Shown: positions 21,252-63,713, numbered from the stretch's first letter. The stretch is 64,000 nt of DNA from Octopus bimaculoides (GCF_001194135.2 NC_068998.1:49128510-49192509), one strand, 5' to 3'. The notes: generated by a model from the sequence alone, not told the origin. A program made the numbers and translations.

Positions 21252-21288
21252 ATGAAAGGTCATATATGTGTTTTTCTTCTCATTTTTG
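21252..21288 (+). CDS. Gene A exon 1 (signal peptide)
   Basis: ATG...MKGHICVFLLIF+G|gtaaat, phase 1; same 37-nt size as gene D exon 1. Confidence 0.8.
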
Positions 21289-21408
21289 GTAAATTAATTT
21301 TATTTTAAATATTCTTAACTTTTATTGAAATCCATAGAATGTCACATTCTGTCTTCGATCGATCGATCGATCGATCCATCCATCCATCCGTCCATCCGTC
21401 CGCCTGAC

Positions 21409-21463
<55 letters not shown>

Positions 21464-21506
21464 ATGTATGTATGTATGTATGTATGTATGTATGTATGTA
21501 TGTATG

Positions 21507-21557
<51 letters not shown>

Positions 21558-23303
21558 GTACGTATTTACCTATCAAACGATCGATCGATCTATCTCAGTT
21601 TAGAGAAATAGCTACCTAGCTTTCTGTTTACCTACAAACACATATACGCTCACAGGCACACACCCACTCACATACATACATGCTTGTGAGCCTATATATA
21701 TCTACACATACATATATTCCCAGAACGCGATCTGTTTTCAAGTTTTAATCCACCCGTATGTAATTTTTATCAATGTCACCGTAGTCTAGATGTTTATCTA
21801 TATGAATATATAAATTTATTTAGCAGCATATATACATTTGCATATATTTCTAATCCGACTATCCATGATGAAAGGTTATATATGTATATCACAATATTTT
21901 CCTCATGATACTATTTACCGTGTGTGAAGCAATGATATTTTTGTTTCATTTATATAATTGTACGTTTAGAATCTCAAGTACTAACTATAATAATTACATA
22001 CGCATTCGCTCTCAGTCAAACATGTATGACGAAATAATAACTATATTTACAGAATCATGCTAAATATACACAAGTTCACCTTACTTGGTTAGACCCCAGT
22101 GCTCTTAGAATACAAGTGTAATATCGAGTCGAGAAACTGATTCGTGTTGGTTTTCCTAACAAAAATCATTGTTATTTGATTGTTTCCTCTCGTCTGTATG
22201 AATTCGTATGGAAACTACGTCATGTACGATATTAGCATAATGAGACAAAAATAGAAAAGGACAGTGGAACTGACAAACATAAATTCTCGCATGACAAGAC
22301 GGAGTCACTTCTTTAGAGGCGTTATCGTTAAATAGGCACAGTGTAGCGCCATACTGGAATCAGTGGAACATGAAACAGCTGCTACGAATGCATTATTTTG
22401 ACACCATGGAAGACATTATGCGAATGATAAGGAATGAAGGATACTGAAACACTTTCTCTTAGTACATATGCTATCCATCAGTAACACCAATCAATCCTCA
22501 AACCGCATTTATGTCTGCCAACAGCAGTAATCAAAGAAATATTTGTTTTACATTTCGTAGAAATATCGACAAGTATCATACGTTTATGCTGATAAAAGTA
22601 GGTCTGAAACAGTTTTCGTTTCAAACCTATTAAGCAATTTTTCTTCACAAACAGAATAGTCAGCAAAAAGCAAAACCGTCCCATAACTATACTGCTAGCA
22701 ATATTGCGAAATCTCTCAAACCTAAGTTTAACGAAAATGTGCCACACCAATCCAGTATCAAATTATATATAAATTTACATTGTTGGACGTTGGTTTCTTT
22801 TCTTCTTCGAAATAAAATCACCAATTGTTCTTTCAAATATGTTTTAAAAATTATAATTTATATTTCTTACTTTCTGTCTGTTGTTTTATCAATATTTAGG
22901 TATTGCAGAGGCCCAGAATTGTGATGAAATGCAAAGCAAACACTGTCCAATGGCCAAGCTAAATTTTACTAAAATCATGGATGGAAAAACATTCTGCAGG
23001 TAAAACTGCTTCTAATCATTTTATTAACATTACCTTCATATATACACACATAAGTGAGTATGTTCCTGTATGCGTGTGCGTGCACGCTTGTATGCGTGCT
23101 TATGCATTATACACACACATATAGAAAGAAATAGATACGACGAGCTTCGTTCAGTTATTGCTATTCCCCCGACCAAATCCAAATGAGAAACCTTTCGGCA
23201 GCCAATTGCAGAAATACATGCCGGAAGTGAGACTGTACACAAAATCATATGGTTGTGATTCAAACTGCTTACCACATACATTGTTAGCTTCCTCACATTC
23301 CCC

Positions 23304-23348
<45 letters not shown>

Positions 23349-26300
23349 NNNNNNNNNNNNNNNNNNNNNNNNNNNNNNNNNNNNNNNNNNNNNNNNNNNN
23401 NNNNNNNNNNNNNNNNNNNNNNNNNNNNNNNNNNNNNNNNNNNNNNNNNNNNNNNNNNNNNNNNNNNNNNNNNNNNNNNNNNNNNNNNNNNNNNNNNNNN
23501 NNNNNNNNNNNNNNNNNNNNNNNNNNNNNNNNNNNNNNNNNNNNNNNNNNNNNNNNNNNNNNNNNNNNNNNNNNNNNNNNNNNNNNNNNNNNNNNNNNNN
23601 NNNNNNNNNNNNNNNNNNNNNNNNNNNNNNNNNNNNNNNNNNNNNNNNNNNNNNNNNNNNNNNNNNNNNNNNNNNNNNNNNNNNNNNNNNNNNNNNNNNN
23701 NNNNNNNNNNNNNNNNNNNNNNNNNNNNNNNNNNNNNNNNNNNNNNNNNNNNNNNNNNNNNNNNNNNNNNNNNNNNNNNNNNNNNNNNNNTATATATATA
23801 TACATATATATGTATATATATATATATATATGTATGTATTTATGGGCGCATTGACGCATCCGTGTGAGCGTCGAACCGAATTCTTCGCAGTATTCGTATT
23901 CCAAATCATACCAGGACATTATTTTATGACTGATTTTACCAACCACTCTGTTTAAGACCACTGCTTGCTACACTCGGTTATTTTAGCGGCGTTTACTCTG
24001 TTGGAACAACTCGGGGCATATTTCCGTTTTAAAGACATCTATGATTCAGTAGAATATATATTTCGCTGAGGAAGATGGACGGTCGTTCACTTAGGTTTAC
24101 GCAACAATCACTTAAATATGCTTGTCTTGCTTACTACTTTTAGTTTTCATACGACAGGAATATAAGATGTAAATTTCACTTTGAATTGCTTACATTTCAG
24201 AACGAAATACGTTTATAAACATCAGGGTAATTGAAAATTTTCATTTTCTCCAATAATTTCTGATTTGTTTCTCAGGCGCTACAAACAGTTTCATCGTTGT
24301 CTTCATCATATAGACTACTGTTATAGATACTATGATTTCGCCTATGCCGAAACCTGTAAGGTAAGATATCCTTATTATTCTGGGCTCAGTTGTTACTACT
24401 ATTGTTTAGTGAATATCCTTGTTAACTGCACCAGTGTTAGTAGTAACAATATATGCTACAAAATTTTGTTACATATCACGTGGAAATTTTCTCAAGTTTT
24501 ATTGTGATTAAATAACCTAACTCATGGTGAATATTTGCGAAAAAAAAAAGCGTCAGTTTGAAAATAAAATGAATAATTATCTCCATAGTTTAGCTTCATA
24601 GAAAAGACAGCAGAACAAAAATTAACTTGTGCGGCATATTAAGTCTGCATTCATCGTGCTGTCGTACAGGATTTAGAAATTTGCCCGAATTAATTAGTCA
24701 TACATTCAATAAGCTAAGTACAAAATTTCTCATACTGACATGTACTAATAAATATTAAGGGAAGCCGTAAAGCCGCTGATTATGTGAGACTCACACACAC
24801 ACATGCTCTCTTTTGTCCGCGAGTATTTCTTTATGTTCATACCTTCCAGCAGTAACAGATAGATTTAAATTTTGCCCGTCACGTCGACTCCTTATGTCTT
24901 TGTCACTCATAGTAAATGTTGTGTTTAGAGAAAATATATTCCTTGATGCGTGTGTATGTGTGCGTGTGTGTTGTTTTCCTTTGTTTGGGTAACAATTTCG
25001 TATTTGAGATGCTTCTCTAGTTTTAGATTGCATTATATACGGCAACGTGCTAAGAGGTGATTGGTGTAGCTCTAGAGTGTTTTATATATGACTGCATATC
25101 TAGAGTTCATTTTTCCTTTTAGTGGTTTATATTTTGTTGTTCTGGCGTATTTTGTAAATATCTCAATATTCAGAGTTGATTGTTTTATGTAGTACAAAGA
25201 ATATGATCCTTAAAACTGTTCTATAAACAATGTGTGCCAGTGGCATGCTCAGTTGATCATTCATGCTTATTATAGCTCTTTCGGTTTCGAGCTGTTTCCT
25301 GGTTATGGCCCCTGTATAACTTGTAATGATAATATGTTTTTGTGTAGTCTTCGTACATAGATCTGATTGCTGCAGGGTTGTTGATGGACAGATAGGATAG
25401 CTCTATTTGCATTGCATGTATGGTATACCCAATGTGTCTATATCATCTGCATGAGATATGCCTAAATTCGTGGGTATTAGCGTTAGTTTTATGTTCTTTT
25501 AAGTTTCATTTAAAAAAAACTGGTGAATTTGTTAAGTAATACATATCTATTGATATAGACCCAGATATCAGCTCATATCGAATACTAGAAGAGGTTCCTA
25601 GGATGCTGAAGTCTCAGCACGATGTAGGTCTGTGTTACATCCGGATGATTATACATCATCTGATCATCACATTTTAACTTTAGAAATATTATGATATCAT
25701 CCAGGTTCGAAATTCGGAAGGACGACTGTGTTGATAGGAATCGATGTAAATATTGGGGAATGCAAACAACATTCGAATTATGTGTATCTTAGGTTATTGC
25801 TTTGTTTACACATGCTTTTCAGGCAGCTTCATGACATTTGCCACATTGAGAAAGTTCAGCTCATGTTCAGGCCTGAAATATCGCTTCTTATGACCGGATA
25901 AATATTCCGTTTATAGGGTATTGCTTCTAAAATATGCGGCTGAGATTTAAGACTAGTCAAAAGGTAGTTTTGATATTCCTTTAGTTGACATATCAGCCTC
26001 AGATAATACGGACAATACGTTCTAAATGACCTCTCCCCAATGTCATATCATGAGATAATGACATGAGGCCCTATATAATGTGGGAGTCCATGAAATGAAG
26101 TGCACAAATTATTACTGGACAAAGAAGTTCGAAGATACTATACGCGAAAGAAACAAAGCTGCGTCCTGCTTTACTGTGAACTTACCTTTTTGTCATCTCT
26201 GACCAAACATAGTGTATTACTGGTATTTACTCATCCGATCTGCATATGATGCAACACAAGTTCATCTAATAATATATCTAGCATGTGAATATTGAAGAAG

Positions 26301-26858
26301 AGATAATGAATATATAATTTGCCCTGAATGTTCAATTTCACAATATAACATCTCTTTCTTACAGTCCAATTCATTTCCGAGCGACACCAGCAGGCCTGAG
26401 GTACGTAACATACTTGTAACACGGCAGCATTAACGAAATATTGATATTTATATTACCGCTGTAATAAGAGTTTATTACACCTTCTTCACGCCAATATGAA
26501 TATTACTGTAATAATCAAACAATGTAATTTTGATATAACGGAGATATACTGGAAAGGCCGGTAAAATGCCGTTTCAGTAAGACTACAGTAATAGGGAAAG
26601 GACTGATAATAACACTAAAGACAGCTCGCAACAATAAAAGCGCGATATCGTTGTGGTAGTTCAATGTAAACGTAGTGATTTTATTAAAGGGAGATTGTAC
26701 TTGCATTACTAGTCAAGATATCTACACATTAATATATGTTTTGCAGGGATTACGAAGATACTAATTCTTTGCTAAGTTACACGGACATAACATATTGCAT
26801 GCCTTTCAAGTTTGCCAAATTTGGACATACGACAGTTTAACATAATAGCATCGATATA

Positions 26859-26908
<50 letters not shown>

Positions 26909-27261
26909 CATATGCTTTGTCTTTTTCCTGAATGCATATGAAATACCGAGCAAAAGTCTTCGGCCACTTTTGACTATTGCAAATTTCTACTAAGTGCCAA
27001 CTTATAGGTGGATGTTTCCAAACGTGAATTGTTCAAATCGCAAAGAATTCCTCTCAAAACATGGCTATGATTCTCCCCAAATACTCCTGCTTGTGATCAG
27101 AGGTGCACATCAAGAGACCTGATAACCAAATCTGTGGTATTAAGCAGAATATTTGCTGTAGCTCATTTTTTATGCGAAGACAAAACGATGTCCATGATAA
27201 TATTTCCAACAATTTAAGATCAAAAGCCATGAGAGCCACTGTCTGGTACTGCCTCAGCGTC

Positions 27262-27296
<35 letters not shown>

Positions 27297-27338
27297 CATC
27301 ATCATCAGTATTATCATTGTTATCATTATTGCTGTTGC

Positions 27339-27389
<51 letters not shown>

Positions 27390-28715
27390 CATTATTATTA
27401 TTATGTAATGAAAATTCAGAGCTTATTTTGCTGGGTATGATGGAAAGAGATAGCTGTCCACAGCCAGCAGACAAAAGTGACACTTGTTTACTAGTCATGC
27501 TTCAAGAACCCTGTGACGGGTAAACAAGTGTCCCTTTAGTCTGCTGGCTGTGGACAGCTGACACTTCCCATCATACCCAGCAGGCTAAGCTGTGAATTGT
27601 CATGACATATTACTATAATTATCATGAGAGAGCCGTGCATGCCATCCAAGTGAGACTGAGGTAAATTATATGAAGCCCAACATAGCCGTCATGACTACTC
27701 GTCTGATAAGGGTGCACCAGGCACATGCGTCACAACCATATGTACACGACATGGTGATCTCATATCAATATAAACAGTGCATGACCTCGCAGGTGGGGGC
27801 CCAGTTAGAATTTTATTCAGGATCGCGTATCCCATCCCGCTCAAAACGTCCCTGAATAATGGTTGTTTAAGGATGTTGAAACACACATGTGGCGAATGCG
27901 TACTTCTCTTCTTTTGTCAACTACCGGCTGGCCGTAGCTCCTTGCTTCATCGTTGACCTGTATAATGGTCATGTTCCACTCGTCAGATGGTCCAGCCGCT
28001 GTCAGCAGTCGCTGAGTGGAGGATTTGTCATACCGTGGCTAATGATGCGCAGACACCCGCTGCAGCATCTCCAGCACTTTCTTAACGGTGAACAGATGTC
28101 GAGCAGGAATTTCTGCAGCTCGTCTCATTGACAGATCTACAATCCTGGTTCAAGCGTAGAGTAAGAAAGGGCGCTTGGCACCTGGCGTGCCGGCAAGCGC
28201 TCAAAGCTTTCTGCCAGTCAACCAGCGCGGTCGGTGGAAGTTCCACCATTGAGTTCTATAGGGGATTAGTGGGAGGCATGAGCGATGACTTCTTCATGGA
28301 AACTCTGGACGTCGGAAGGGACCAATTAACTGGTTTTTTCAGGAGGACTTTCGTATATCTTCCAGAAATCCATCGCCTAGCAGTGCTACCGGAGAGATTT
28401 GACAGTTCGAGACAATCTCTACAGACACGGAGGTGCTGTCAGACGACCTGTCCGAGATGTGCACAGGGCGACAAAACCGTCCTCAGTTGAAAAGCAGAGA
28501 GGCGGCTACTGAGGTGCATCTGGCTGTCAGAATAACCAGAATGTATTGGGTTCCTCGGTTGTCCCTGTAAGAAACTTCCCTTTTTGCGAAATTTTATTGT
28601 TTAATTACGTTGTTAATTGTCATTGTTATATTATTGTTTACTCGAATTTTGTGTCCCGAGGTCTGTATTGTCTCTATTTGTTTTGTGTTCGGCCCTTGTG
28701 TCCACTAAAGAAACG

Positions 28716-28750
<35 letters not shown>

Positions 28751-28837
28751 CATTATTATTATTATTATTATTACTATTACTATTATTATTATTACTATTA
28801 CCATTATTATTATTGTCATTATTATTATTACTATGAC

Positions 28838-28921
<84 letters not shown>

Positions 28922-29184
28922 CATAACGTCTCCAAATAATTTCACTGAGCTGCATTATTATACCAACTGCAAATGCATTATTAGTGATACTCTACATAAA
29001 ACATAGAAAACCAATATCAAATTATCAGACACAATGATGTGGAATTACTGAAATCGTTACTTATTGAATGTACAGTTTTCATCAATGAAAATATTTGAAT
29101 AAACATATTTGCATTTTCTTTCAGGTCAGGTTCAAAACAGTCTTGTTTACCGCAATCGTCGTCATGTTACCAATGCATATATAA
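21252..29184 (+). CDS. Gene A: 105-aa secreted/putatively GPI-anchored six-cysteine protein (5 coding exons)
   Basis: join(21252..21288,22900..22999,24276..24360,26365..26400,29125..29184) = 318 nt, all GT-AG, phases 1,2,0,0. Translation MKGHICVFLLIFGIAEAQNCDEMQSKHCPMAKLNFTKIMDGKTFCRRYKQFHRCLHHIDYCYRYYDFAYAETCKSNSFPSDTSRPEVRFKTVLFTAIVVMLPMHI*. Exons 2-5 have same-sized counterparts in gene B. Product class is inferred from the N- and C-terminal hydrophobic segments. Confidence 0.88.
21355..21595. repeat. Compound tetranucleotide array (GATC/CATC/TGTC/TATG/TATC) in gene A intron 1
   Basis: Stepwise succession of 4-mer units. Confidence 0.95.
22900..22999 (+). CDS. Gene A exon 2 (Cys1-3)
   Basis: aatatttag|GT ATT GCA...TTC TGC AG|gtaaaa; 100 nt, 70% identical to 34932-35031. 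Confidence 0.9.
23349..23790. other. Assembly gap (N) in gene A intron 2
   Basis: N run. Other large gaps at 38831-39308, 48432-48762 and 59227-59479; smaller ones near 7349, 31703, 34026, 37270 and 57574. Confidence 1.
24276..24360 (+). CDS. Gene A exon 3 (Cys4-6)
   Basis: tttctcag|G CGC TAC...TGT AAG|gtaaga; 85 nt. Confidence 0.9.
25100..25490 (-). mobile_element. Decayed RT fragment in gene A intron 3
   Basis: Minus-strand LGISHADDIDTLG resembles the YADD catalytic motif; the segment is absent from gene B intron 3. Confidence 0.4.
26365..26400 (+). CDS. Gene A exon 4 (linker micro-exon)
   Basis: tctttcttacag|SNSFPSDTSRPE|gtacgt; 36 nt, phase 0-0. Confidence 0.85.
27010..27262. mobile_element. 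Second copy of the 16.4-16.7 kb repeat, in gene A intron 4
   Basis: Same blocks as 16385-16737, also followed by (ATC)n/(ATT)n. Confidence 0.7.
27263..27404. repeat. (ATC)n/(ATT)n microsatellite
   Basis: Direct inspection. Confidence 0.95.
27429..27582. repeat. Long inverted repeat (63-bp arms, 28-nt loop)
   Basis: 27429-27491 versus the reverse complement of 27520-27582: 57/63 identical. Confidence 0.9.
27886..28716 (+). mobile_element. 5'-truncated Tx1/L1-clade LINE (ORF2 C-terminus plus 3' UTR) in gene A intron 4
   Basis: GC-richer block. Frameshifted translation VPLVRWS...GGFVIPWLMMRRH...KGAWHLACRQAL...TCPRCAQGDKTV contains the C-x2-C knuckle typical of L1/Tx1 ORF2 ends. Followed by (ATT)n; absent from gene B intron 4. 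Confidence 0.75.
28717..28925. repeat. Long (ATT)n microsatellite after the Tx1-like LINE
   Basis: Direct inspection. Confidence 0.95.
29125..29184 (+). CDS. Gene A exon 5 (hydrophobic C-terminal tail)
   Basis: ttttctttcag|VRFKTVLFTAIVVMLPMHI*. Confidence 0.88.
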   Translation, partial: VRFKTVLFTAIVVMLPMHI

Positions 29185-31702: not shown

Positions 31703-32047
31703 NNNNNNNNNNNNNNNNNNNNNNNNNNNNNNNNNNNNNNNNNNNNNNNNNNNNNNNNNNNNNNNNNNNNNNNNNNNNNNNNNNNNNNNNNNNNNNNNNN
31801 NNNNNNNNNNNNATATATATATATATATATAATGAAAATAGTTAACGCACGATTACTGAGAAATTCAGTGAATGTATAATTCGCACCAATTTGTTTTCCA
31901 AATTCCTATAAAACTTGTCATTTAAAACATCGACACACGAGTCTTTAATACAATCTTCGCCTAACAGACAATGAAAGACTTAAGTATAATGACATCACAT
32001 ACATCATATTTATATCTATTTTAGAAATAACATCTGTTGACAGCATT

Positions 32048-32053
32048 TATAAA
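32048..32053 (+). promoter_or_regulatory. Candidate TATA box of gene B
   Basis: TATAAA 68 nt before the ATG, inside the block cagcatttataaagaatttagaaaag that is conserved upstream of gene C. Confidence 0.5.
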
Positions 32054-32115
32054 GAATTTAGAAAAGATCACTGTATGTAGTTCTCTGTGAAGCCTTCTGT
32101 TTGACATAAATAAGT

Positions 32116-32155
32116 ATGATGAATTCTTGTATCTTTATCTTATTTTTCTTTGTTG
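32116..32155 (+). CDS. Gene B exon 1 (signal peptide)
   Basis: MMNSCIFILFFFV+G|gtaagt, phase 1. Confidence 0.85.
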
Positions 32156-33986: not shown

Positions 33987-34025
<39 letters not shown>

Positions 34026-37000
34026 NNNNNNNNNNAAAAAAAAAAAAAAAAAAAAAAAAAAGAAAAAAAAAAGGTTACGATTATTACTAAACGAATTTTT
34101 AAGAATCGGTTTTAGTGAGATTTCTTTTGTTGAAGCATTCTATGGAAAAATATTTTGTGACAACACAATTCTGTGCATGTCGTGTAATCTTATGTATTTG
34201 AGGTAGTAAGTAAATTAAGATAACATATAAGATTAATTACTGTTCAATATTTCTGTGTTTATTTCCTATCCAGTAGCAAATTGTATCGCAAATATTTATA
34301 CATATAAGAAGTATTCAATATTCAATACTGAAATTTCATTGTTAAACGTAATATATCATATTCTATGTTTTAGAATTTACCTGTTGATTCCCAGTAAGAA
34401 CGAATATGTTAGGTGTTATAGTAATATGGTTGGTTTCAGTTATTCTGGTTGTTAGTATCGATTGAAGTATTGTATTACTGAATATTGACACCCTAGCATA
34501 TCACAGTGTACGTTTTGGGGTCTGCGCCGGGTTGAGTGAGTAGCTAAGAAGCTTGCTTCCGAACCATATAGTCAGACACCATAGATTCGTCAATAAAAAA
34601 TAGATCTAACTTCCTTTTTAAAGTACTTTTCAAACGATTGTTTTTTTTTTCAAAACTACTAAGAACTTTCACTTCACAAACCGGAAAACAAAACCATCAC
34701 ACAGCAATATTCGTAGAAGTATTCTGATATCTCTCGAGCCTAAAGTTATACGAACAGGTATATCAGTCCAGAAGCAAATTATGTATAAATATACATTATT
34801 CAACATTGTTTTCTTCTGTTTCCGTATTGTATTTTGAGCATAATAAACTCACGAATTTTTCTTTCAACCACATGATTTAAAAACAAGGATTTAATTTCCT
34901 ACTTTGTCTTTGTCGTTTTATCAATATTTAGGTACAGCAGTGGCACAAGATTGTGATTTCTTGCAAAACAAATACTGTCCATATGCCATGATAGATTTTA
35001 GTGAAATTACGAACGAAAACGTTTTCTGCCGGTAAATATCCTCTAACTGCTTCTATTAATATTAATTTGATTAATGGGAGAGACGGAAGATGGAAAAGGC
35101 GAAAATCTTTCTATGTTGATCACTAAAATTGTTTTGAGCCGTCTAGCATCGATACCTTGTGGGTGTAGTTCTGAAAATCTGATTTAGGTGTGTCATTCGG
35201 TGTATATGTGCCTCTTCAATAGGTATCTCGTTAAAATAAACTCTGTTTCGAAAGATTCCTCGGTCTTCGTATATAGAGGTGGCAAATTAAAGCGTACACC
35301 TTCGTTCTTTTAGAAGATCCATAACAAATATCAGATACAATAAAAAAAAGAACAAAACAAAACAGAATACATCGAAACAAGTACTTTTGTAAAAACGTAT
35401 GTTTCATTTCGTTGAATTATCATGGAGCTTGAAAATATTTCTAAGAAAAATATGTGTGTGTGTCTATATACATGTACAAACACAGACAGGCACACAGACA
35501 CACACGTGCACACATATACACATATTTGTATATATATATTTATCGACCATACATATTCAATACGCAAACGCCACATACATGTCGATAGGCCGCGATTTAG
35601 CGCGGTAGTGGTTACTCCCTGAAATTGACGGTGGTTGAAGCGACTGAATGTCATAGAGAATCAAGACAACTCACCCCAGATGTCATTAAGGAAGATGAGA
35701 CATCAATTTTGCACCGTTTTTGTCACCTATATTCCCTTCTGAATAAAAGTAAAAAAAAGTAGCAGTATTTATTTTTCTTTTACTTACCCATTCTAGAAGC
35801 TGGATAGCTGAACTTAAAGCAATGTGCTTGTTTCAGTAGAATATATATATGAAGCTAATAACTCCGATTTTGGTGGAAAATACTGAATATTTGTTCTATT
35901 TTTGAGGAATATTTATGTTCGTTCACTTTGGTTGAACAGTAATCAATTAAATATGCCTCCATTGTTTACTACATATATTTTTCGTACTCCAGGAATATAA
36001 AACATAAATTTCGCTTGGAATCGCTTACGTCTCAGAACGAAATACCTTCCTAAAATGTCAGGATAATTCAACATTTTCTGTTTGCCAATAATTTATGATT
36101 TTTTCGCAGACGTTACAAAGATTTTGATTATTGTTTTCATACAATACTCCCCTGTCAAAAATACTATGATTTCGTGTATTTCGAAACCTGTGAGGTAAGA
36201 TATTTTTATTACTCTGGGCTCAGTTGCTACTACTATTGTTTAGTCAATTTTCTTGTTAGCTTCGCCAGTTTTAGTGGTAGAGATATCTGCTATAAAATTA
36301 TATTATATATAACGTAAAGATTTCCACAAGTTGTATTATATATCTTAGTTATTCTTTCATGCATACATGTTTTCTGGCAGTCACATGACGTCTGCCACGT
36401 TGGGGATGTTCAGCGCATATTCAGGCTTGAAATACCGCTTCTTATGATCCGATATACATTCCGATTATAGTGTAATATTTCCTGAAATATGTGACTGAAA
36501 TGATATACGCGAACGAAACAAAACTGCATCATACTTTACAATGGACTTCTTTTTTCTTCATCTCTGACATAGTGTATTACAGGTGTTTATTCTTCCGAGA
36601 TGGATATGATGCAACACAATTTCGTCTAATGATAACATTCTTAGTTTGGGAATATTGAATAAGAGATAATAGACGTATTATTTGTATTGAATTTTCAATT
36701 TCACAATACATAAGTTCTTTTTTACAGTACTCTAGCAAGGAGAACGACTCTAGCAGACCTGAGGTACGTAAAACTCTTATAACGCCACACTATGAACCTA
36801 ATATTGATATTTATATTACAACTGTAATAACACTATGTCACACCTACTTCACACCAGTATGAATATTACTGTAATAACCAAAGCCATATCATTTTCATAT
36901 TAATGAGATGTATTGGTAAGGCCGGTGAAAATTTCGTTCCAGTAAGACTACAATAATAAGGAATGGACTGATAGTAGCACTAAAGATATCTCAAAACAAA

Positions 37001-37203: not shown

Positions 37204-37269
<66 letters not shown>

Positions 37270-37432: not shown

Positions 37433-38173
37433 ATAGAGTATTGTAGTTCACTGGAAACATTGCGTATTGTTTATGAAATGTAACCTTTCTGGAATTGTAC
37501 AACAATGCAGAATGGACTATAATAACTGTTATTAATAATTTAGTTATTCATAGTCTGACATAATATTTCGGAATATAAAAATTCCTACTGATTTCAGTAA
37601 CCTCTATAACAGAGACACCGCTACTTCCTAGCAATATCTGAAGAAAGAATCTTAATATTCCGAAATATTGGACTGTAAATAATTAACTTGTTTCTAACAG
37701 TTATTATAGTTCACTCAGCGTTGTTGCACCAATCCAGACACATTACATTTTACACACACACACATATCTTCATATGTTTATTTAGTGAGACATAGGCACG
37801 CACATACACGCATACATACAACATACAATATCCTGTAACAGTCATTCACGTTTGGAAGACGTTGGAATAACTCACGGGCTTCAATCTCATATCTCTGCAA
37901 TTTTATCATTATGATTGCGAATGATAATTTTATTGAACCGTACTATATTATATCAATTACAAATGTGATATTAGTGTTACCCTACATTGGACTAAGAAAA
38001 CCAGTATGTATTGATTCTACAATGTTGTAAAATATTGAAATTGTACCTAATCGAATTTACAGTTTTCAATCAGTATCATTATTTGAATAAACGTGTTTGT
38101 CTTCTATTTGCAGATTAAGTTTAAAACAGTATTGTTTACTGCAATCACCATCATGTTACCAATGCATATATAA
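32116..38173 (+). CDS. Gene B: 106-aa paralog of gene A (5 coding exons)
   Basis: join(32116..32155,34932..35031,36110..36194,36728..36763,38114..38173) = 321 nt, GT-AG, phases 1,2,0,0. Translation MMNSCIFILFFFVGTAVAQDCDFLQNKYCPYAMIDFSEITNENVFCRRYKDFDYCFHTILPCQKYYDFVYFETCEYSSKENDSSRPEIKFKTVLFTAITIMLPMHI*. AATAAA at 38173-38178. Confidence 0.9.
33335..33650 (+). mobile_element. tRNA-headed SINE in gene B intron 1
   Basis: B-box-like agttcgattctc at about 33375 followed by a GC-richer body. Confidence 0.45.
33990..34072. repeat. Poly(A) run spanning a small N gap
   Basis: Direct inspection. Confidence 0.9.
34932..35031 (+). CDS. Gene B exon 2
   Basis: aatatttag|TAVAQDCDFLQNKYCPYAMIDFSEITNENVFC|gtaaat; 100 nt. 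Confidence 0.9.
36110..36194 (+). CDS. Gene B exon 3
   Basis: ttttcgcag|RYKDFDYCFHTILPCQKYYDFVYFETCE|gtaaga; 85 nt. Confidence 0.9.
36728..36763 (+). CDS. Gene B exon 4
   Basis: tttttacag|YSSKENDSSRPE|gtacgt; 36 nt. Confidence 0.85.
38114..38173 (+). CDS. Gene B exon 5
   Basis: ctatttgcag|IKFKTVLFTAITIMLPMHI*. Confidence 0.88.
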   Translation: MKFKTVLFTAITIMLPMHI

Positions 38174-42674: not shown

Positions 42675-42759
42675 ACGTTTCAGAATAGACGACCCGTGTG
42701 TTCAGGCAATAACTACTTGTTCTGCATTCTTCAATAAAATGTACGAGGAAAAGTGTGTG
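42675..42759 (+). CDS. Gene C exon 3
   Basis: aatttcag|85 nt, three Cys with family spacing|gtaaga. Confidence 0.8.
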
Positions 42760-43239: not shown

Positions 43240-43278
43240 TATGGCCATCGACCTAAAAACTTTAGAAGTGAATATAGG
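43240..43278 (+). CDS. Gene C exon 4
   Basis: tgttttcag|YGHRPKNFRSEYR|gtacgt, the same donor hexamer as A/B exon 4. Confidence 0.7.
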
Positions 43279-44302: not shown

Positions 44303-44368
44303 ATCAGTATCCAATCAATATTTGCGACAATAATTGTGCTGATGGTATTGCAAATATATAAATATTAA
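44303..44368 (+). CDS. Gene C exon 5
   Basis: ttctctttacag|ISIQSIFATIIVLMVLQIYKY*, followed by AATAAA. Confidence 0.75.
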   Translation: MSIQSIFATIIVLMVLQIYKY

Positions 44369-49088: not shown

Positions 49089-50139
49089 ACGTACATATAT
49101 ATGTTTACGTACGTGCATATATGTGTGTGTTTACGTACGTACATATGTATACCATTACCTAGTTTCGTGTATATGGATAAATACATATGTATGTGTATGT
49201 TTATATACATAGACTCACACACACACATGTGCACACTCACAAATACATATATATGCATGATACATGCGTGAGTTATATCTATGCACATATGTCTAACTTT
49301 CATTACATTTTCCTCTTTATCTATGCAACTCAGAAAATTAAACCTGTACAGTATATCACTGCAAAACCCCATGAGATTAAGGTAAACATTTGGTTGATTT
49401 GACCAGGTTAAACCGCTTGTATTTGTTGTCAAACGTAATTTAATCTATTGTATTATTTGCATTTTTCATAGCTGTTGCCAGTAAGAAAGTGTCATGATTA
49501 CTTTGTAGATGATAATTTAATTTCTTTGGGGCGAGATTCATAGATGTTTGCAATATGATACCTTTTCTTGTGTGATTATGAAAGTGAATGACGTAAATAT
49601 CTATGTATTCGTATCTATGTATGCTGTATATCATATGGGATATATATACTTATATATCTCCACATCAGAGGTGGGATATCTAATACTATCGAATTTTACG
49701 TTTGCAATTATAGAAATGCATCTGTCGGAGATTATTTACTTTACAAACAATTCAAGAGTTATCCGGAAGGAAAATAATATGACCAGCGATTACCTGTAGC
49801 AACTTTTAGAAGTAGGAATAGTTTGGAACTACTTTTGTCTTTAACAATACCAGGTGAATGATCTCACATCACGATTAATGCATTTACCAAAAGTTTTTCC
49901 AAACATCATGTACCTTAATTATATATAGAACATGTCATCAGTCAGAAGGAGCAAGTTAACTACCTATCACTCCGATAGTGAGATACATAGAGAGAAAATC
50001 AGAAACGAAATCACCTCCTATCCTGAGATTATCAGTAAGAATCATGAAGGTAAATGTAGAGAGAAACACTAAACACATCGACATAGAGGACGATATAATG
50101 CACGCTGCATTATATAAATTAAAAAATATTGCTTTCAAT

Positions 50140-50560
50140 TTTTGGCGCAGACCCAGCAATTTTAGGGGAGGGATCAGTCGGTAACATCGAGCCAAGTATT
50201 CAACTGGTGCTTATTTTATCGAATCCAAAGGGAAGAATGATAAAGTCAACCTCGTCGGAATTTGAACTCAGAGCGAAAAGTTAGCGGCATTTAGATGACG
50301 CTAACTATCCTGCCAGCTCACACCTTAATATACACTAAAAATATCGGTTTCAAGTTTCGGCACAAGGCCAGAAATTTCACGAGTGGGGGTGAGTCAATTA
50401 GAGCAACCACAGTGAACATCTGGTACTTACTTTATCGACACCAAAGTGTCGAAAGCAATGTTAACCTCAATGGAATTTGAACTCAGAACGTAACGACGGG
50501 CGAAATGCTGCTAAGCATTCTTTCCGACGTGCTAACGTTTCAGCCAGCTCGCCGTCTTCT
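50140..50560 (-). mobile_element. Two adjacent copies of the same SINE (about 50140-50325 and 50345-50560)
   Basis: Both contain ggaatttgaactcaga and (c)tggt(g/a)ctta blocks. Confidence 0.7.
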
Positions 50561-57573: not shown

Positions 57574-57583
57574 NNNNNNNNNN

Positions 57584-58950: not shown

Positions 58951-58957
58951 TATATAA
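58951..58957 (+). promoter_or_regulatory. Candidate TATA box of gene D
   Basis: TATATAA 70 nt before the ATG, matching the B/C spacing. Confidence 0.4.
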
Positions 58958-59020
58958 GTAAAAGATACGTGTAAGTTGTCACAATATGAAGAGGAGTTGA
59001 ATTAAAAGCCCCAAACCAAG

Positions 59021-59057
59021 ATGAAATATTCTATATTTATTTTGCTTCTCATTGTTG
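59021..59057 (+). CDS. Gene D exon 1 (signal peptide)
   Basis: MKYSIFILLLIV+G|gtaagt. Confidence 0.85.
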
Positions 59058-62000
59058 GTAAGTAGCTATACGATGGTTACGTCTGAATTTTCATCACTAT
59101 TTTTCAATTGTTGCATGGCATATCGAGGCAGTGACAGTAACAAATAAACTTTTTCCAATCTGTGACTTCTTTTTTATTTCTGGTTTCTATATACACACAC
59201 ACACGTATATATATATATATATATATNNNNNNNNNNNNNNNNNNNNNNNNNNNNNNNNNNNNNNNNNNNNNNNNNNNNNNNNNNNNNNNNNNNNNNNNNN
59301 NNNNNNNNNNNNNNNNNNNNNNNNNNNNNNNNNNNNNNNNNNNNNNNNNNNNNNNNNNNNNNNNNNNNNNNNNNNNNNNNNNNNNNNNNNNNNNNNNNNN
59401 NNNNNNNNNNNNNNNNNNNNNNNNNNNNNNNNNNNNNNNNNNNNNNNNNNNNNNNNNNNNNNNNNNNNNNNNNNNNNNNTATATGTTTGTGTATATGCAT
59501 ACATGTCTGTCTATCTATATATACATATACGAATATGTGCATATATATATACAAGTACATATATATATATATATTCTGAACTTTACTTTCATTTTATCAC
59601 AGCTAACCTGTGCAAATACATATTCAAAATGTTAAAGCTTTTAACATTTTTCTAAAAAATTAAGGAATAAATTAATCACAAATTAGAATTCAACGTGTAA
59701 AACTACATCAATATATCAAATCTGAAAAAAATTTCAATTTCAAAATTTCAAAATCTGTGACAGCAACAGCAAGATAATCTCTATTTGTCTATCACATTCA
59801 TTTTTTTGCTTTTGTCATGGTAAACATTTCCCTCTCTCAATACATCTTTAATACACTCTCTCATTCTCCATAAAAGTATATAGCTCAAGCACATTGTACG
59901 CTTGTCAGGATGTGTGTATACATGTGTGCAAAGTTTTTCATTAGGGTGACAGGGTGCTTTAAAAAAGTTATGTGAAAGATAATTTATTTTCATAGCATAC
60001 TGTTCTCATAGTAAATATGCTTTTTCTCACCGCCTCTCTCACGTACTCGCTCGGTGCAGGGTGGGCGATTAAAGATTTCAGTTACTTTTATTTATTTATG
60101 TTTGGGCTTTGCTGAAAACCCAACAATTGATCACCGCACCATCATTCCCTAATATGAGTATATGGGGCAAAATATAAAAAAAAAATATCAATACATATAA
60201 CAAAGAAATCAGAAAGGTATCAGGTGGTCGATATACTAGAAACAACATATAAATTGACCTTAAATCACACACTTATTCCTCTGAAATATATTTTTAAAAT
60301 TATGAGACACAAATTGCAGATTCCATCATTTTGAAATTCCCTGAAATAAAGTTCTACGCCACAAGAAACATTTTGAAACGTTACCATAATACGCGTAACT
60401 TCGCAAAATCAGACATACAACAGCCATATGCATTTCCTCTCTATAATATAAATTGAAACTAAACGGAGTTTATGGTTTTGTTTTGCAGCATAAATTCAGT
60501 GTTGTAAAAATAATTTCAGAATTTCAAATACAATTTCAAATTTTCAGATGTTGCGTTGTCAATTCAATGCACTCACGAGGCATCATCGAAGTGTGCGTCA
60601 ACTTATACAACAATTGATTCAACAGCGAGATTCTGCAAGTATATATGATCATACTGTTACTATTGATGTTACGGTTAGGATTGATATAGTTATTTAATGG
60701 CAGATATTTGTGGTTATAAAGCTTTATCGTTTTCAAGATGATCGATATAATTAAATAGAATTCAGTCGATGAAACTGACTATAACTGTTTATCCGTTTAC
60801 AATTGTGGAAACATTGTATTAGCATGATTTAAACTAAGCTAGTTTGAACAAAGTTTATTGGGCCAATCGAACGGTATTTTTGTTGTTTACTTACAGATGT
60901 CTAATAAGAGAAAAGACCCCACAGAATGTGTTAGGCAGTACTCAGTTAAATGTGAATCAAACACGTATTTTTGTATATATTGAAACGAAATTGGCTCAAT
61001 TTCACAGGGGTTGTTTTACACAACCTGAAAAGTGCAATCCCTGGATAATATATCTGACTGAAATAATGTTATTTCCTGCGGTGTTGCCTATTTGTACTGA
61101 ACTACGTGATTATCATTTTATTTTTTTTTAAATACCCGAGTATTGCATTTGATCATTCTACTTATGATTCACCCACAGAAAAAGCGAGTTTGAGACCGGA
61201 ATAGAGAAAATTAGAGGGTAGAATTATAATCAAAGCAAAAACTCTAAATGTATAATATTCAATCATGTTTTTTGAGTTCAAATTACGCTGAGGTCGACTT
61301 TGCCTTTCATCCTTTCGGGTTCGATAAATTAAGTTCCAGTTGCGTACTGGGGTCGAGCAAATCGACTGGCCTCCTCCCCCAAAATTTCAGGCCTTGTGCC
61401 TAGATCAGAACAGAACATTCAATCATATTTTTATCTTTCAGACAGTACAACAATTTTGCTAAATGTTCCCGAGAATTAGGCAAATATTGTAGAAGATTTT
61501 ATGACTTTGTGCATTTCCATAAGTGTGTGGTAAGATATTAAATGAATCATATTTGTTTACTTTCTTTAATTTACATTTCCCTTATCAACTTAAATAGAAT
61601 AATTTCATTGTAGAGAGATAAGAAACTATTAAACGTTCTAAAATACACCTTTGAATGAACAGTCGAGTAAGGAAAGTATAAGTTTATTAGTTTTCTTTTA
61701 TTTTTTTAAATAGAAAATAATACAAAATCGAACTTGCCGACAATGGCATAACAAAATCAAACATAAATGCAGCTACCATGCTTGCAGTATTTCCTCTAGT
61801 AGCATCTGTCCATCTAAAGTATATTACTGGTATGATCTTTTAATCGACAATAGTATAATCGTTTCAAATTTAGGCACACTCACAGCAGTTTTGAGGGGCG
61901 GAGGAAGTCGATCGCAACACTCCCAAAACTTGACTTTTATTTATTTTGCCGACACCAAAATGATGAATGCGAATGCAGCAGAATTTGAAATTGCATTCAG

Positions 62001-63713
62001 AAAATAAGTCATCTTGTCCGGTATTCTAATTGCTTTGCCAGCTTGCTGACAATTAAATGAGCGTAGAATAATGACTTGTATATTGGGCAGAGAACGAGCG
62101 AATTTTAATGATCGCTAATATCGTTTTATTTTATTTTAATCTTCAAGGCGTTTCCCATCGTTTTTAAGTGCGCAATGCAATAAGAATGATGGCCAAAATC
62201 GGTATTGTCTGTTGGGGGGAGATTTGAATAATTCATAAATTTTCAAAAATACTTTTACTTTGTTACCGAAAGTACAGGAGTCTCTCATTGTGTTTAATGG
62301 ACGAAATCAATCGGGATCTTGTGGGGCTCATAAAGTTTCAAACAATTTTTCATAGAAAGATCCCTCTATCATTTGCCAAGTTGTATTGGAAAAGTTTCTG
62401 ATGACGTATTATTCGTTTTCACAACATATCAACACTTTGTTTGCAGGCAGGTACGACGAAGAAACCAAAAGCTTCCAGTACCAGAATTGGGGTAAGCAAT
62501 ATGTTTCTACTGATGCTGAGACATCCATATATTATTACGATTATGTAAATTTGAGAGATATGTTTTGTACTTCATAGTAATACCGGCGAAATGTTTGTCT
62601 AATAACCGCATTTGAAGTACTATGTTAAGCCTTTGGAATAAGACTACAATTAAACTCAATTGACGATAAAACAAACAGCCTACCTTCCATGCCAAACCCG
62701 ATAACTTTTATTAGTATGCATTACAGCATACTTTGATTCCTATTATTCTTACCGTCAGCCAAATTAAGGTGCTGATACAGTGTGCATTACATGATTTCTC
62801 TCTCGTATTAATATGAAATTGCAATGCACTAAGGGGAATATTAGAGCGATTTACAGTGACTTTGATGCGATAGATATGTAATACATATCACTATTCCTTG
62901 AAATATAAAATCTACTCTATCGCGTTAAGAGAATGCTGCCTTATAAATGAAGTTCTCTAAACTGGTGTTGTTACATCAATACGATAGAAAGTTTAACATG
63001 CATTACATATAGCATATCGCAGTAATACATATATCCTACAATAATTATAACACACTGGTAATAGTATAAAAGAAAAGGAATAACGTATCAGTGTCATCAC
63101 TAGATTTTTGTAGCTAAATTTAAAAGCATCCACGTAACAACCAGCGTCTTCTCAATAAGAAAGCTGGTCTTGAAAACACTTGGTTCAGGGTGAAATCTCA
63201 TAATCTCGTACGTGGCAAATTACGCAAATCACACACAGTACAAGCTTGGACCGACCAAAGCCTCGTGAGCGAATTTTTTAGACAGACACTGAGTGAAATC
63301 CAGTCGTGCCTACCACCACATTGTAACAATTGTTCGATTGTTTATGTCCCCGTCAATAAGTGGTTCAGGAGAGAGAATCAACACATAAGTACTAATCGCA
63401 AATTTGAGCATTAAAAGTGACGTGTTGGAGTAAACGTTTTCATGTTGGTAGTCTTGTATAGCTGCAGTTTAATGATTGAAATAAGTAAAACATAGAAATG
63501 TATAATGAGATGTCGTTCGTTGATTTGCTAATACCATTTCTAATTGTGAAGCAATGAAATTACTAACAAAAAGAAAACAACTTCTTTCTATCTTTCTTTA
63601 TATTAAAAGTTCGTCAATATATATATATAAAATATTTTTTCTGCTCTTTACAGGGGAAGATCGAATCAGTATTCGTCACTGCGGTTGTATCTCTAATACT
63701 CATACAAATATAA
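59021..63713 (+). CDS. Gene D: 106-aa divergent paralog (5 coding exons)
   Basis: join(59021..59057,60548..60638,61442..61529,62447..62491,63654..63713) = 321 nt, GT-AG, phases 1,2,0,0. Translation MKYSIFILLLIVDVALSIQCTHEASSKCASTYTTIDSTARFCKQYNNFAKCSRELGKYCRRFYDFVHFHKCVAGTTKKPKASSTRIGGKIESVFVTAVVSLILIQI*. AATAAA at 63713-63718. Confidence 0.88.
60548..60638 (+). CDS. Gene D exon 2
   Basis: aattttcag|(D)VALSIQCTHEASSKCASTYTTIDSTARFC|gtatat; 91 nt, phase 1-2. Confidence 0.85.
61270..61415 (+). mobile_element. SINE copy in gene D intron 2
   Basis: gagttcaaattacgctgaggtcgactttgcctttcatcctttcggg..., same family in plus orientation. Confidence 0.7.
61442..61529 (+). CDS. Gene D exon 3
   Basis: tatctttcag|QYNNFAKCSRELGKYCRRFYDFVHFHKCV|gtaaga; 88 nt. 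Confidence 0.88.
61860..62045 (-). mobile_element. Decayed SINE copy in gene D intron 3
   Basis: tttcaaatttaggcac...aagtcgat...gcagaatttgaa...ttgccagct, a diverged minus-orientation copy. Confidence 0.5.
62447..62491 (+). CDS. Gene D exon 4
   Basis: ttgtttgcag|AGTTKKPKASSTRIG|gtaagc; 45 nt, phase 0-0. Confidence 0.75.
63654..63713 (+). CDS. Gene D exon 5
   Basis: ctctttacag|GKIESVFVTAVVSLILIQI*, stop overlapping AATAAA. Confidence 0.85.
   Translation, partial: GKIESVFVTAVVSLILIQI

What the first reader, a model, noticed from the sequence alone, without database searches (positions are those of the whole stretch)
21252..63713. Hidden tandem cluster of four micro-exon genes encoding ~105-aa secreted, probably GPI-anchored six-cysteine proteins
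Seen: three complete and one near-complete plus-strand genes with 36-100 nt coding exons, GT-AG boundaries and intron phases 1-2-0-0, none recoverable as a gene from the ORF track. The shared cysteine frame is C-x7-C-x13/16-C-x8-C-x6/7-C-x11-C. Each has a 12-13 aa hydrophobic exon 1, a polar linker exon and a terminal hydrophobic exon with almost no cytoplasmic tail. The exon structure maps onto modules (signal / Cys1-3 / Cys4-6 / linker / anchor). Established: a signal peptide plus small-residue linker plus terminal hydrophobic stretch is the GPI-anchor signature. Inference: a lineage-expanded family of small cell-surface or shed disulfide proteins that I cannot assign to a named cephalopod family.
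Basis: partly seen in the sequence, partly recalled or inferred. Interest (0 to 1): 0.92.

Follow-up and report, generated by a model that had tools for sequence, protein, structure and literature searches.

The report
Octopus tandem family of small surface proteins
The window holds three intact genes and one defective gene from a large Octopus-only tandem family of about 105-residue, six-cysteine, three-helix proteins that are probably lipid-anchored; RefSeq already lists them as "uncharacterized", and their domain faintly resembles the growth-factor-binding head of repulsive guidance molecules.

Summary
Four plus-strand genes with short GT-AG exons and intron phases 1-2-0-0 lie at 21252-63713. 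Three are intact (105, 106 and 106 aa). Their spliced products are identical to Octopus bimaculoides RefSeq models LOC106877823, LOC128249874 and LOC128249827, all named "uncharacterized protein". The fourth gene, g3, has no exon 2 and is out of frame.

All N gaps lie in introns or between genes, and none hides an exon.

The genes belong to an array of at least 20 paralogues on chromosome CM046618.1. All 24 relatives whose source I could check are from the genus Octopus.

With a 29-sequence alignment, AlphaFold2 predicts a three-helix bundle holding the six cysteines, with pLDDT of about 90.

The signal peptide and a 15-residue terminal tail preceded by small residues fit GPI-anchor rules. No GPI predictor could be run.

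The closest known domain is the N-terminal domain of repulsive guidance molecules (Pfam RGM_N). That domain is also a three-helix, three-disulfide module on GPI-anchored proteins. The similarity is recurrent but below threshold, and the residues that contact BMP/GDF are not conserved.

The family is real and undescribed in the literature searched, but its genes are not "hidden". I rate it a new variant of a known kind, of moderate interest.

The parts
21252..21288 (+). g1 (LOC106877823) coding exon 1: signal-peptide h-region MKGHICVFLLIF, phase-1 donor. NCBI isoform X1 starts at the upstream in-frame ATG at 21228.
22900..22999 (+). g1 exon 2: signal-peptide cleavage region (AEA|Q) and Cys1-3
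24276..24360 (+). g1 exon 3: Cys4-6
26365..26400 (+). g1 exon 4: 36-nt polar linker SNSFPSDTSRPE with candidate omega site (DTS)
29125..29184 (+). g1 exon 5: VRFK plus the 15-residue hydrophobic tail and the stop codon
32116..32155 (+). g2 (LOC128249874) exon 1, MMNSCIFILFFFV. Its promoter and exon 1 are about 77% identical to those of g3.
34932..35031 (+). g2 exon 2: Cys1-3
36110..36194 (+). g2 exon 3: Cys4-6
36728..36763 (+). g2 exon 4: linker YSSKENDSSRPE
38114..38173 (+). g2 exon 5: hydrophobic tail and stop codon
40885..40924 (+). g3 exon 1 (MMKSCIFILFFVV), with an intact ATG and a GTGAGT donor
42675..42759 (+). g3 exon 3: Cys4-6. No exon 2 lies between 40925 and 42674, so the gene is out of frame as it stands. 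A weak substitute exon at 42082-42139 would restore the frame but is not homologous.
43240..43278 (+). g3 exon 4: 39-nt linker with a GTACGT donor, as in g1 and g2
44303..44368 (+). g3 exon 5: hydrophobic tail and stop codon, with AATAAA at 44375
59021..59057 (+). g4 (LOC128249827) exon 1, MKYSIFILLLIV
60548..60638 (+). g4 exon 2: Cys1-3 (C-x7-C-x13-C)
61442..61529 (+). g4 exon 3: Cys4-6 (C-x7-C-x11-C)
62447..62491 (+). g4 exon 4: 45-nt linker AGTTKKPKASSTRIG
63654..63713 (+). g4 exon 5: hydrophobic tail and stop codon
32221..32775 (+). Junction of the tandem duplication, inside g2 intron 1. Sequence upstream of it is homologous to g3, and sequence downstream of it to g1.
   Evidence: colinear blocks, all about 77% identical

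Best explanation
The window holds four adjacent members (three intact, one defective) of an Octopus-restricted, tandemly amplified gene family.

Each intact gene encodes a precursor of about 105 aa with four modules:
1. A cleavable signal peptide (exon 1 and the start of exon 2) takes it into the ER.
2. A domain of about 55 residues (exons 2 and 3) folds into a three-helix bundle. Its six invariant cysteines presumably form three disulfides.
3. A polar Ser/Thr/Pro linker of 12-15 residues (exon 4) carries small residues that fit a GPI omega site.
4. A 15-residue terminal hydrophobic stretch (exon 5) would be exchanged for a GPI anchor. That would leave a helical module of about 60 residues on the outer face of the cell membrane, from which it could be shed.

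The domain is best read as a very divergent, stand-alone relative of the RGM N-terminal domain. Its likely role is therefore a tethered ligand-binding or co-receptor module.

Its surface diverges fast (dN/dS about 1) while the cysteine and aromatic core stays fixed. The RGM residues that contact BMP/GDF are not kept, so the ligand is unknown.

The array grows by unequal crossing-over within intron 1, which re-pairs signal-peptide exons with domain exons. g2 is such a chimera.

Shown: the gene models, the family and its distribution, and the predicted fold. Inferred: disulfide pairing, GPI anchoring, homology to RGM_N, and the binding function.
For: Gene models
- They are read directly from the sequence and are identical to the RefSeq proteins.
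- The O. vulgaris orthologue P0005 independently spans the exon 2/3 and 3/4 junctions.

Family
- There are 34 representatives at E<=1e-3, and all those checked are from Octopus.
- Neighbouring paralogues are seen directly.

Fold
- AlphaFold2 with 29 sequences gives pLDDT 88-95 over residues 21-70, with helices at 5-28, 42-57 and 60-75.
- The six cysteines are invariant in 47 domain instances.

Tail
- All three intact genes have a 15-residue uncharged tail, no trailing residues, and small-residue triplets 10-11 residues upstream. The same pattern is recurrent in the family.

RGM_N link
- Multi-domain relatives pass the Pfam whole-protein cut-off of 24.2 bits: P0008 scores 37.9 and P0017 scores 29.1.
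- Nine of ten isolated domains hit RGM_N at 13.7-22.6 bits, and it is the top family in eight of them.
- It is the only recurrent Pfam family among single-domain members, in 6 of 29.
- With the domain profile A5, the top three of 177,635 PDB sequences are RGMB N-domain chains, at E 0.04-0.07.
- hhalign gives P = 2.3e-4.
- The hhalign score of 17.6 is not reached by any of 200 cysteine-preserving column shuffles (mean 8.2, maximum 14.4).
- The RGM N-domain is a three-helix bundle with three disulfides on GPI-anchored proteins (PMC7354924).

Evolution
- Colinear g1/g2 and g2/g3 blocks are all about 77% identical.
- Between g1 and g2, dN/dS is 0.78 overall and 1.0 in the domain.
Against: - No expression data could be examined.
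- No SignalP, NetGPI or PredGPI run was possible. The tail contains Pro and His, and the spacer is rather charged.
- g1 and g2 themselves give no Pfam RGM_N hit, and g4 gives only E 0.97.
- No single domain reaches the Pfam cut-off.
- The sequence match covers mainly C3-x8-C4-x7-C5. The C1-C2 spacing is 7 here against 4 in RGM, and the C5-C6 spacing is 11 against 22.
- Foldseek of either AlphaFold2 model against the PDB did not return RGM or anything significant.
- The RG[DN]-L-x-x-H contact motif is absent.
- The dN/dS estimate rests on only about 27 synonymous sites.
Confidence: 0.6

Rival explanations
1. The fold and cysteine frame arose independently, or are too diverged to say. On this view the RGM_N similarity is convergence of short disulfide-pinned helices, and the family is an orphan Octopus invention with no informative relatives.
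For: - No single domain passes the Pfam threshold.
- The window's own proteins barely register.
- Foldseek finds nothing.
- The outer cysteine spacings differ from RGM, and the functional RGD-loop motif is missing.
- Calcitonin-receptor ectodomains score nearly as well as RGMA in the PDB scan.
Against: - Nine of ten domains hit the same Pfam family out of 24,736, and it is the top family for eight of them.
- RGMB chains rank 1-3 of 177,635 PDB sequences.
- The hhalign score lies above all 200 cysteine-fixed shuffles.
- Helix number, disulfide number and predicted membrane anchor type are the same as in RGM.
Confidence: 0.35
2. The proteins are not GPI-anchored. The terminal hydrophobic stretch would act as a short transmembrane or tail anchor, or the products are simply secreted soluble peptides (venom, antimicrobial, pheromone-like or matrix) with a hydrophobic C-terminal propeptide.
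For: - No GPI predictor was run.
- Several annotated relatives or isoforms lack the tail altogether: P0025, P0033, P0034 and P0036.
- Fast evolution and tandem expansion are typical of secreted effectors.
Against: - A 15-residue uncharged segment containing Pro and His, with no residue after it, is short for a stable bilayer span.
- Small-residue triplets sit at the expected distance upstream in all three intact genes and in most tailed relatives.
- Some tail-less models are clearly annotation artefacts. For example, P0005 reads through the exon 4 donor.
Confidence: 0.2
3. The models are annotation or reader artefacts, or decaying pseudogenes with no function.
For: - g3 lacks an exon and is out of frame.
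- dN/dS is near 1 in the domain.
- No transcript data were examined here.
Against: - Three genes keep complete open frames across five exons with canonical splice sites.
- All six cysteines and the aromatic core are invariant across 47 domains in three species.
- AlphaFold2 is confident.
- Two independent annotations, NCBI Gnomon and the O. vulgaris project, call the same exons.
Confidence: 0.04

Closest known systems
Repulsive guidance molecule N-terminal domain (Pfam PF06535 RGM_N; human RGMA, RGMB and RGMC; PDB 4UHY, 4UHZ, 4UI1, 6Z3H)
   Same: - It is a small all-helical domain with three helices and six cysteines forming three disulfides.
- The central spacing C-x8-C-x7-C is shared, with F/L before C3 and conserved hydrophobic residues between C3 and C4.
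- It is carried by GPI-anchored cell-surface proteins.
- It is the top PDB and Pfam similarity (PMC7354924).
   Different: - The similarity is below threshold for any single domain.
- C1-C2 is x7 here against x4 in RGM, and C5-C6 is x11 against x22, so helix 3 is shorter.
- The RG[DN]-L-x-x-H BMP/GDF contact motif is absent.
- There is no RGM_C / partial vWD domain, no GDPH autocleavage site and no neogenin-binding part.
- The octopus proteins are about 105 aa, against about 430 aa for RGMs.
- The octopus genes form a tandem array of dozens, against one to three RGM genes per genome.
Ly6/uPAR (three-finger) small GPI-anchored proteins such as CD59 and Lynx1
   Same: - The precursor layout is the same: signal peptide, one small disulfide-rich domain, a short linker and a GPI signal.
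- The precursor size is about 100-130 aa.
- Coding exons are few and short, and the families are clustered and lineage-expanded (from my general knowledge).
   Different: Ly6/uPAR domains are beta-stranded three-finger folds with 8-10 cysteines and a C-terminal CN motif. The octopus domain has six cysteines and is predicted to be all-helical. There was no Pfam hit.
GDNF-receptor/GAS1-type helical cysteine-rich domain (Pfam PF02351). UniProt names the relative P0016 (A0A0L8GPX5) 'GDNF/GAS1 domain-containing protein'.
   Same: It is a helical, disulfide-rich extracellular domain on GPI-anchored co-receptors for cystine-knot ligands. One two-domain octopus relative carries this automatic name.
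   Different: Pfam PF02351 did not match P0016 or any of the other 44 sequences scanned at E<=1. GFR-alpha domains have about ten cysteines (from my general knowledge). No GFR-alpha or GAS1 chain appeared in the PDB profile scans.
Schistosome micro-exon genes (MEGs)
   Same: They encode small secreted products built from short exons, in lineage-specific, fast-evolving families.
   Different: MEGs are built mostly of many symmetric 6-36 nt exons (from my general knowledge). Here only exon 4 (36-45 nt) qualifies, and the main domain sits in exons of 85-100 nt with asymmetric phases.

Membership tests
RGM_N-like domain (Pfam PF06535) | Sequence match to the Pfam model at or above the gathering score of 24.2 bits | tested here: inconclusive
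   - Window proteins: g1 and g2 gave no hit, and g4 gave E 0.97.
- Multi-domain relatives P0008 (37.9 bits) and P0017 (29.1 bits) pass on summed repeats.
- Nine of ten single domains score 13.7-22.6 bits, so none passes alone.
RGM_N-like domain (Pfam PF06535) | Three-helix bundle stabilised by three disulfides | tested here: met
   The AlphaFold2 model has three helices over the six-cysteine region with pLDDT about 90. The six cysteines are invariant. The RGM description comes from PMC7354924. The fold is a prediction only, and disulfide connectivity was not compared.
RGM_N-like domain (Pfam PF06535) | Structural match to solved RGM N-domains | tested here: not met
   Foldseek of both full-length models against the PDB returned no RGM chain and nothing at E<1. 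Small helical bundles are hard for this method, and the model could not be trimmed.
RGM family proper (RGMA/B/C, DRAGON, hemojuvelin) | RG[DN] loop with Leu and His that contact BMP/GDF | tested here: not met
   In the alignment, C-[QYR]-[KR]-[YF]-Y-D-F takes the place of C-R-G-[DN]-L-x-[YF]-H.
RGM family proper (RGMA/B/C, DRAGON, hemojuvelin) | C-terminal RGM_C / partial vWD domain with GDPH autocleavage and neogenin binding | tested here: not met
   The proteins are 105-106 aa. After the domain, only a 12-15 residue linker and the tail follow.
GPI-anchored proteins | N-terminal signal peptide, plus a C-terminal signal made of small omega/omega+2 residues, a polar spacer and a terminal hydrophobic stretch with no cytoplasmic tail | tested here: inconclusive
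   A rule-based script gave the same result for g1, g2 and g4: a 15-residue uncharged tail, 0 trailing residues, and DTS/DSS/ASS-type triplets 10-11 residues upstream. No trained predictor was run and there is no experiment.
GDNF/GAS1 domain (PF02351) | Match to the Pfam GDNF model | tested here: not met
   No hit at E<=1 in 45 sequences scanned, including P0016, which carries that UniProt name.
Ly6/uPAR three-finger domain | 8-10 cysteines in a beta-strand three-finger fold, with a Pfam UPAR_LY6 match | tested here: not met
   The domain has six cysteines, the model is all-helical, and there is no Pfam hit.
Micro-exon genes in the schistosome sense | Most of the CDS made of several symmetric exons of 36 nt or less | tested here: not met
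   Coding exon lengths are 37-40, 91-100, 85-88, 36-45 and 60 nt, with phases 1-2-0-0.

The most novel reading that the evidence does not exclude
Octopuses have taken the growth-factor-binding head of an RGM-type co-receptor, freed it from the rest of the protein, put it directly on a GPI anchor and amplified it into dozens of fast-diverging tandem copies, alongside multi-domain forms with up to about nine repeats. The result would be a lineage-specific repertoire of tethered binders or decoys for secreted cystine-knot ligands or other surface receptors. Such a repertoire could tune signalling or recognition in octopus-specific tissues such as suckers, skin or the nervous system.
Probability: 0.15. 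Interest if true: 0.75.

Novelty: new variant of a known kind. Interest (0 to 1): 0.5.

Why it matters
Large lineage-specific gene expansions are one of the few genomic signatures tied to cephalopod novelty. Examples, from my general knowledge, are protocadherins, zinc fingers and chemotactile receptors.

This array adds an undescribed family of at least 20 small surface proteins that so far appears confined to Octopus. It gives the family a testable structural and functional handle: an RGM-N-like three-helix module on a probable GPI anchor.

It also shows a clean mechanism of family growth. Unequal crossing-over in intron 1 swaps signal-peptide exons between neighbouring genes.

The impact is limited for three reasons. 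The genes are already RefSeq loci, their function and expression are unknown, and the link to RGM is below threshold.

Tried and rejected
- **Pfam on the three window proteins:** nothing significant.
- **PDB sequence search with the 3-sequence profile and the 29-sequence full-length profile:** only noise, with RGMB at E 0.92.
- **phmmer of P0008 against the PDB:** nothing.
- **Foldseek of both AlphaFold2 models against the PDB:** no meaningful match.
- **GDNF/GAS1 assignment suggested by a UniProt name:** not reproduced with Pfam.
- **Calcitonin-receptor ectodomain hits (E 0.15-0.4):** no stretch passes on its own, so I treated them as chance resemblance of the 'YP..PD..YC.R' motif.
- **Search for g3 exon 2:** I used a cysteine regex, splice-aware enumeration, blastn against the exon-2 regions of g1, g2 and g4, a protein HMM on six frames, and nhmmer. 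All were negative. The in-frame candidate at 42082-42139 has the wrong cysteine spacing, so I did not adopt it.
- **Further family members elsewhere in the window:** none, on either strand.
- **Long ORFs in the window:** all are microsatellite translations or run through N runs.
- **tRNA and Rfam scans:** empty.
- **Literature searches on the LOC ids, RGM_N/PF06535, and octopus GPI/cysteine-rich families:** four of five searches found no description of this family. The fifth supplied the RGM structure paper.
- **The look-up of encoding contigs for P0035 and P0001:** not on record.

Full report
**What is there.** The window is AT-rich DNA (about 33% GC) with nine N runs.

- Three are complete five-exon genes. 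g1 runs from 21252 to 29184 (105 aa), g2 from 32116 to 38173 (106 aa), and g4 from 59021 to 63713 (106 aa).
- Their coding exons are 37-40, 91-100, 85-88, 36-45 and 60 nt long.
- Every intron is GT-AG with a pyrimidine-rich acceptor, and the phases are 1-2-0-0.
- No conventional ORF covers any of this. The long ORFs in the window are translations of microsatellites or run through N runs.

**More than chance, and independently supported.** A profile HMM of the family, run on all six reading frames, picks out exactly these exons at E 1e-9 to 1e-5. It also finds g3 exon 3 and exon 1, and nothing else in the 64 kb.

The spliced products match RefSeq proteins of Octopus bimaculoides.
- g2 equals XP product P0004 (LOC128249874).
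- g4 equals P0003 (LOC128249827).
- g1 equals isoform X1 of LOC106877823 (P0002), except that NCBI starts at an in-frame ATG 24 nt upstream, at 21228.

An exact spliced mapping of those proteins onto the chromosome recovers the same exon sizes. The NCBI CDS ranges coincide with mine after adding 49,128,509, on CM046618.1 of assembly GCA_001194135.2. An O. vulgaris protein (P0005, 76% identical in the domain) spans the exon 2/3 and 3/4 junctions of the g2 orthologue in a separate annotation.

The genes are therefore real and correctly read. They are not hidden from public annotation, where all are named "uncharacterized protein".

**Assembly gaps.**
- No exon is closer than 169 nt to an N run.
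- Four gaps fall in introns: g1 intron 2, g2 introns 1 and 4, and g4 intron 1.
- The other three gaps in the finding's span are between genes. One of them (31703-31812) ends about 300 nt upstream of the g2 start codon. The window's two remaining N runs, at 7349-7362 and 57574-57583, lie outside the genes.
- g1 and g2 are colinear through exons and introns at about 77% identity. Where one copy has a gap, the other has a gap-free intron of similar size with no extra exon.
- The proteins align without missing segments, so the gaps do not affect the models.
- The gap edges are microsatellites, as the ORF translations show.

**The fourth gene.** g3 has several intact parts:
- an exon 1 and promoter about 77% identical to those of g2;
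- a recognisable exon 3 (Cys4-6), a 39-nt linker exon with the same GTACGT donor as g1 and g2, and a hydrophobic terminal exon followed by AATAAA.

It has no exon 2. The regex, blastn, the protein HMM and nhmmer all fail to find one in the gap-free 1.75 kb between exons 1 and 3. Splicing exon 1 to exon 3 shifts the frame. NCBI lists no protein for g3 in loci that cover it. A 58-nt AG/GT segment at 42082-42139 would restore the frame, but its cysteine spacing is wrong. I regard g3 as defective or as an unresolved variant.

**A large, Octopus-only family.** A full HMMER scan of 1.84 billion representative proteins gave 34 hits at E<=1e-3.
- All 24 hits whose source I could read are from O. bimaculoides, O. 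vulgaris or O. sinensis.
- Twenty distinct O. bimaculoides loci lie on the same 55.6-Mb chromosome.
- The next paralogue (P0013) starts 2.6 kb beyond the window. Three more sit side by side at 49.87 Mb.
- The O. vulgaris members have nearly consecutive accession numbers on one chromosome.
- Most members are 100-125 aa with the same layout. A few carry two, four or about eight to nine tandem copies of the domain: P0016, P0008 and P0009. P0009 is on another chromosome.
- In the distant paralogue P0027 the first three coding exons are 37, 100 and 89 nt, and the linker and tail are fused into one exon. The signal / Cys1-3 / Cys4-6 exon design is therefore old.

**Structure and targeting.** With only three sequences AlphaFold2 was unsure (pLDDT 59). 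With the 29-sequence alignment it predicts a three-helix bundle, with pLDDT 88-95 over residues 21-70 of g2. The six cysteines are invariant in 47 domain instances.

The N-termini have a short basic start, 10-12 hydrophobic residues, and A-x-A or A-x-S just before the first cysteine.

Each intact gene ends in a 15-residue uncharged tail with nothing after it. A charged or polar spacer precedes the tail, and small-residue triplets (DTS, DSS, ASS) lie 10-11 residues upstream. My script found this pattern in 18 of 36 relatives, and some clear cases were missed by its thresholds.

These features fit the textbook GPI signal better than a transmembrane span. I could not run a trained predictor, so the anchor remains an inference.

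**Closest known domain.** The window proteins have no significant Pfam hit, but the family repeatedly points to one Pfam model, RGM_N.
- P0008 (37.9 bits) and P0017 (29.1 bits) exceed the 24.2-bit whole-protein cut-off through summed repeats.
- Six of 29 single-domain members hit it weakly, and no other Pfam family recurs.
- Nine of ten isolated domains hit it at 13.7-22.6 bits, often over model positions 4-55 of 70.
- A domain-only profile ranks RGMB N-domain chains first to third among 177,635 PDB sequences, at E 0.04-0.07.
- hhalign gives P = 2.3e-4 against RGMB.
- Against an RGMA/B/C alignment built from tool-verified PDB sequences, the hhalign score is 17.6. Two hundred cysteine-preserving column shuffles gave a mean of 8.2 and a maximum of 14.4.

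The RGM N-domain is described as a bundle of three helices held by three disulfides. It is the BMP/GDF-binding part of GPI-anchored RGMs (PMC7354924).

Several points weigh against homology.
- No single domain passes the Pfam threshold.
- The match is centred on C3-x8-C4-x7-C5, and the outer cysteine spacings differ.
- Foldseek did not recover RGM.
- The RG[DN]-L-x-x-H motif that contacts GDF5/BMP2 is replaced by an aromatic-rich C-x-x-[YF]-[YF]-D-F.

I therefore call the domain RGM_N-like (probability of homology about 0.5). I do not file these proteins in the RGM family, whose C-terminal domain, autocleavage site and contact motif they lack.

Pfam does not reproduce the UniProt label "GDNF/GAS1 domain" on P0016.

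**How the array evolves.** The colinear blocks show that g1 from mid-intron 1 through exon 5 matches g2 from mid-intron 1 through exon 5. The g2 promoter, exon 1 and first 66 nt of intron 1 match the same parts of g3. All blocks are about 77% identical.

One tandem duplication with breakpoints in intron 1 explains this. It makes g2 a chimera, with a g3-type signal exon and g1-type domain exons. The junction lies between 32221 and 32775.

Between g1 and g2, synonymous divergence (0.28-0.35) is similar to intron divergence (about 0.23). Non-synonymous divergence in the domain equals the synonymous value, so dN/dS is 1.0 there and 0.78 overall. Because the cysteines and the aromatic core are fixed, the remaining surface must be changing very fast. 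The number of sites is small, and relaxed constraint cannot be separated from positive selection.

**Verdict.** What changes is the context.
- The genes are annotated but uncharacterised RefSeq loci.
- They are a small sample of a much larger Octopus-restricted array.
- One copy is broken.
- "Micro-exon" overstates the case.
- The domain has a plausible, though weak, tie to the RGM N-terminal domain.

No paper in the searchable library describes the family. Function and expression remain untested.

Noticed in passing
window 21228-21262: NCBI isoform X1 of g1 starts at an in-frame ATG at 21228, which adds MCLRVIST. Isoform X2 (P0001, 103 aa) uses an alternative donor right after ATGAAAG (21258|GT). 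That removes the hydrophobic core of the signal peptide, so X2 would not be secreted.
   Followed up: partly
window 31814-32775 versus 40571-40989 and 22097-22424: g2 is a chimera created at a tandem-duplication junction inside intron 1. Its promoter and exon 1 match g3, and the rest matches g1, all at about 77% identity. Signal-peptide exons are thus reshuffled between neighbouring genes.
   Followed up: partly
window 40925-42674: g3 keeps a conserved promoter, exon 1, exons 3-5 and a poly(A) signal, but has lost exon 2 (Cys1-3) without any assembly gap. An unrelated in-frame AG/GT segment at 42082-42139 could substitute for it.
   Followed up: yes
window 12418-12632, 20639-21057, 50112-50558, 61237-61419 (minus strand): A dispersed repeat of about 150-400 bp occurs in several copies at 70-84% identity. 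One copy lies just upstream of g1. Another lies in g4 intron 2, about 25 nt before the exon 3 acceptor. It was not classified.
   Followed up: no
window 27258-27404, 28711-28990, 16729-16776: Long trinucleotide repeats translate as poly-Tyr, poly-His, poly-Leu or poly-Ile and give spurious exon-like candidates. They lie in g1 intron 4 and upstream of the genes and are not coding.
   Followed up: partly
edges of all N runs, e.g. 23349, 37270, 38831, 48432, 57574, 59227: Each gap is flanked by di- or tri-nucleotide microsatellites (TA, CA or GA types). The assembly therefore breaks at simple repeats rather than at structural rearrangements.
   Followed up: partly
relatives P0009/P0037 (LOC128248155, another chromosome), P0008, P0016, P0017, P0036: Multi-domain family members carry 2 to about 9 tandem copies of the domain and a conserved 'YP..PD..[YF]C.RL' motif. 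They score better against Pfam RGM_N than the single-domain genes do, and they may be closer to the ancestral form.
   Followed up: partly
locus L003 10001-13515 (P0027, CM046618.1 at about 49.87 Mb): This paralogue has four coding exons (37, 100, 89 and 95 nt), not five. The linker and tail are fused, and exon 3 ends in phase 1.
   Followed up: partly
PDB profile scan with alignment A5: Calcitonin and CGRP receptor ectodomains appear just below RGMB (E 0.15-0.4), through a 'P....YCNR' stretch. This is probably chance.
   Followed up: no
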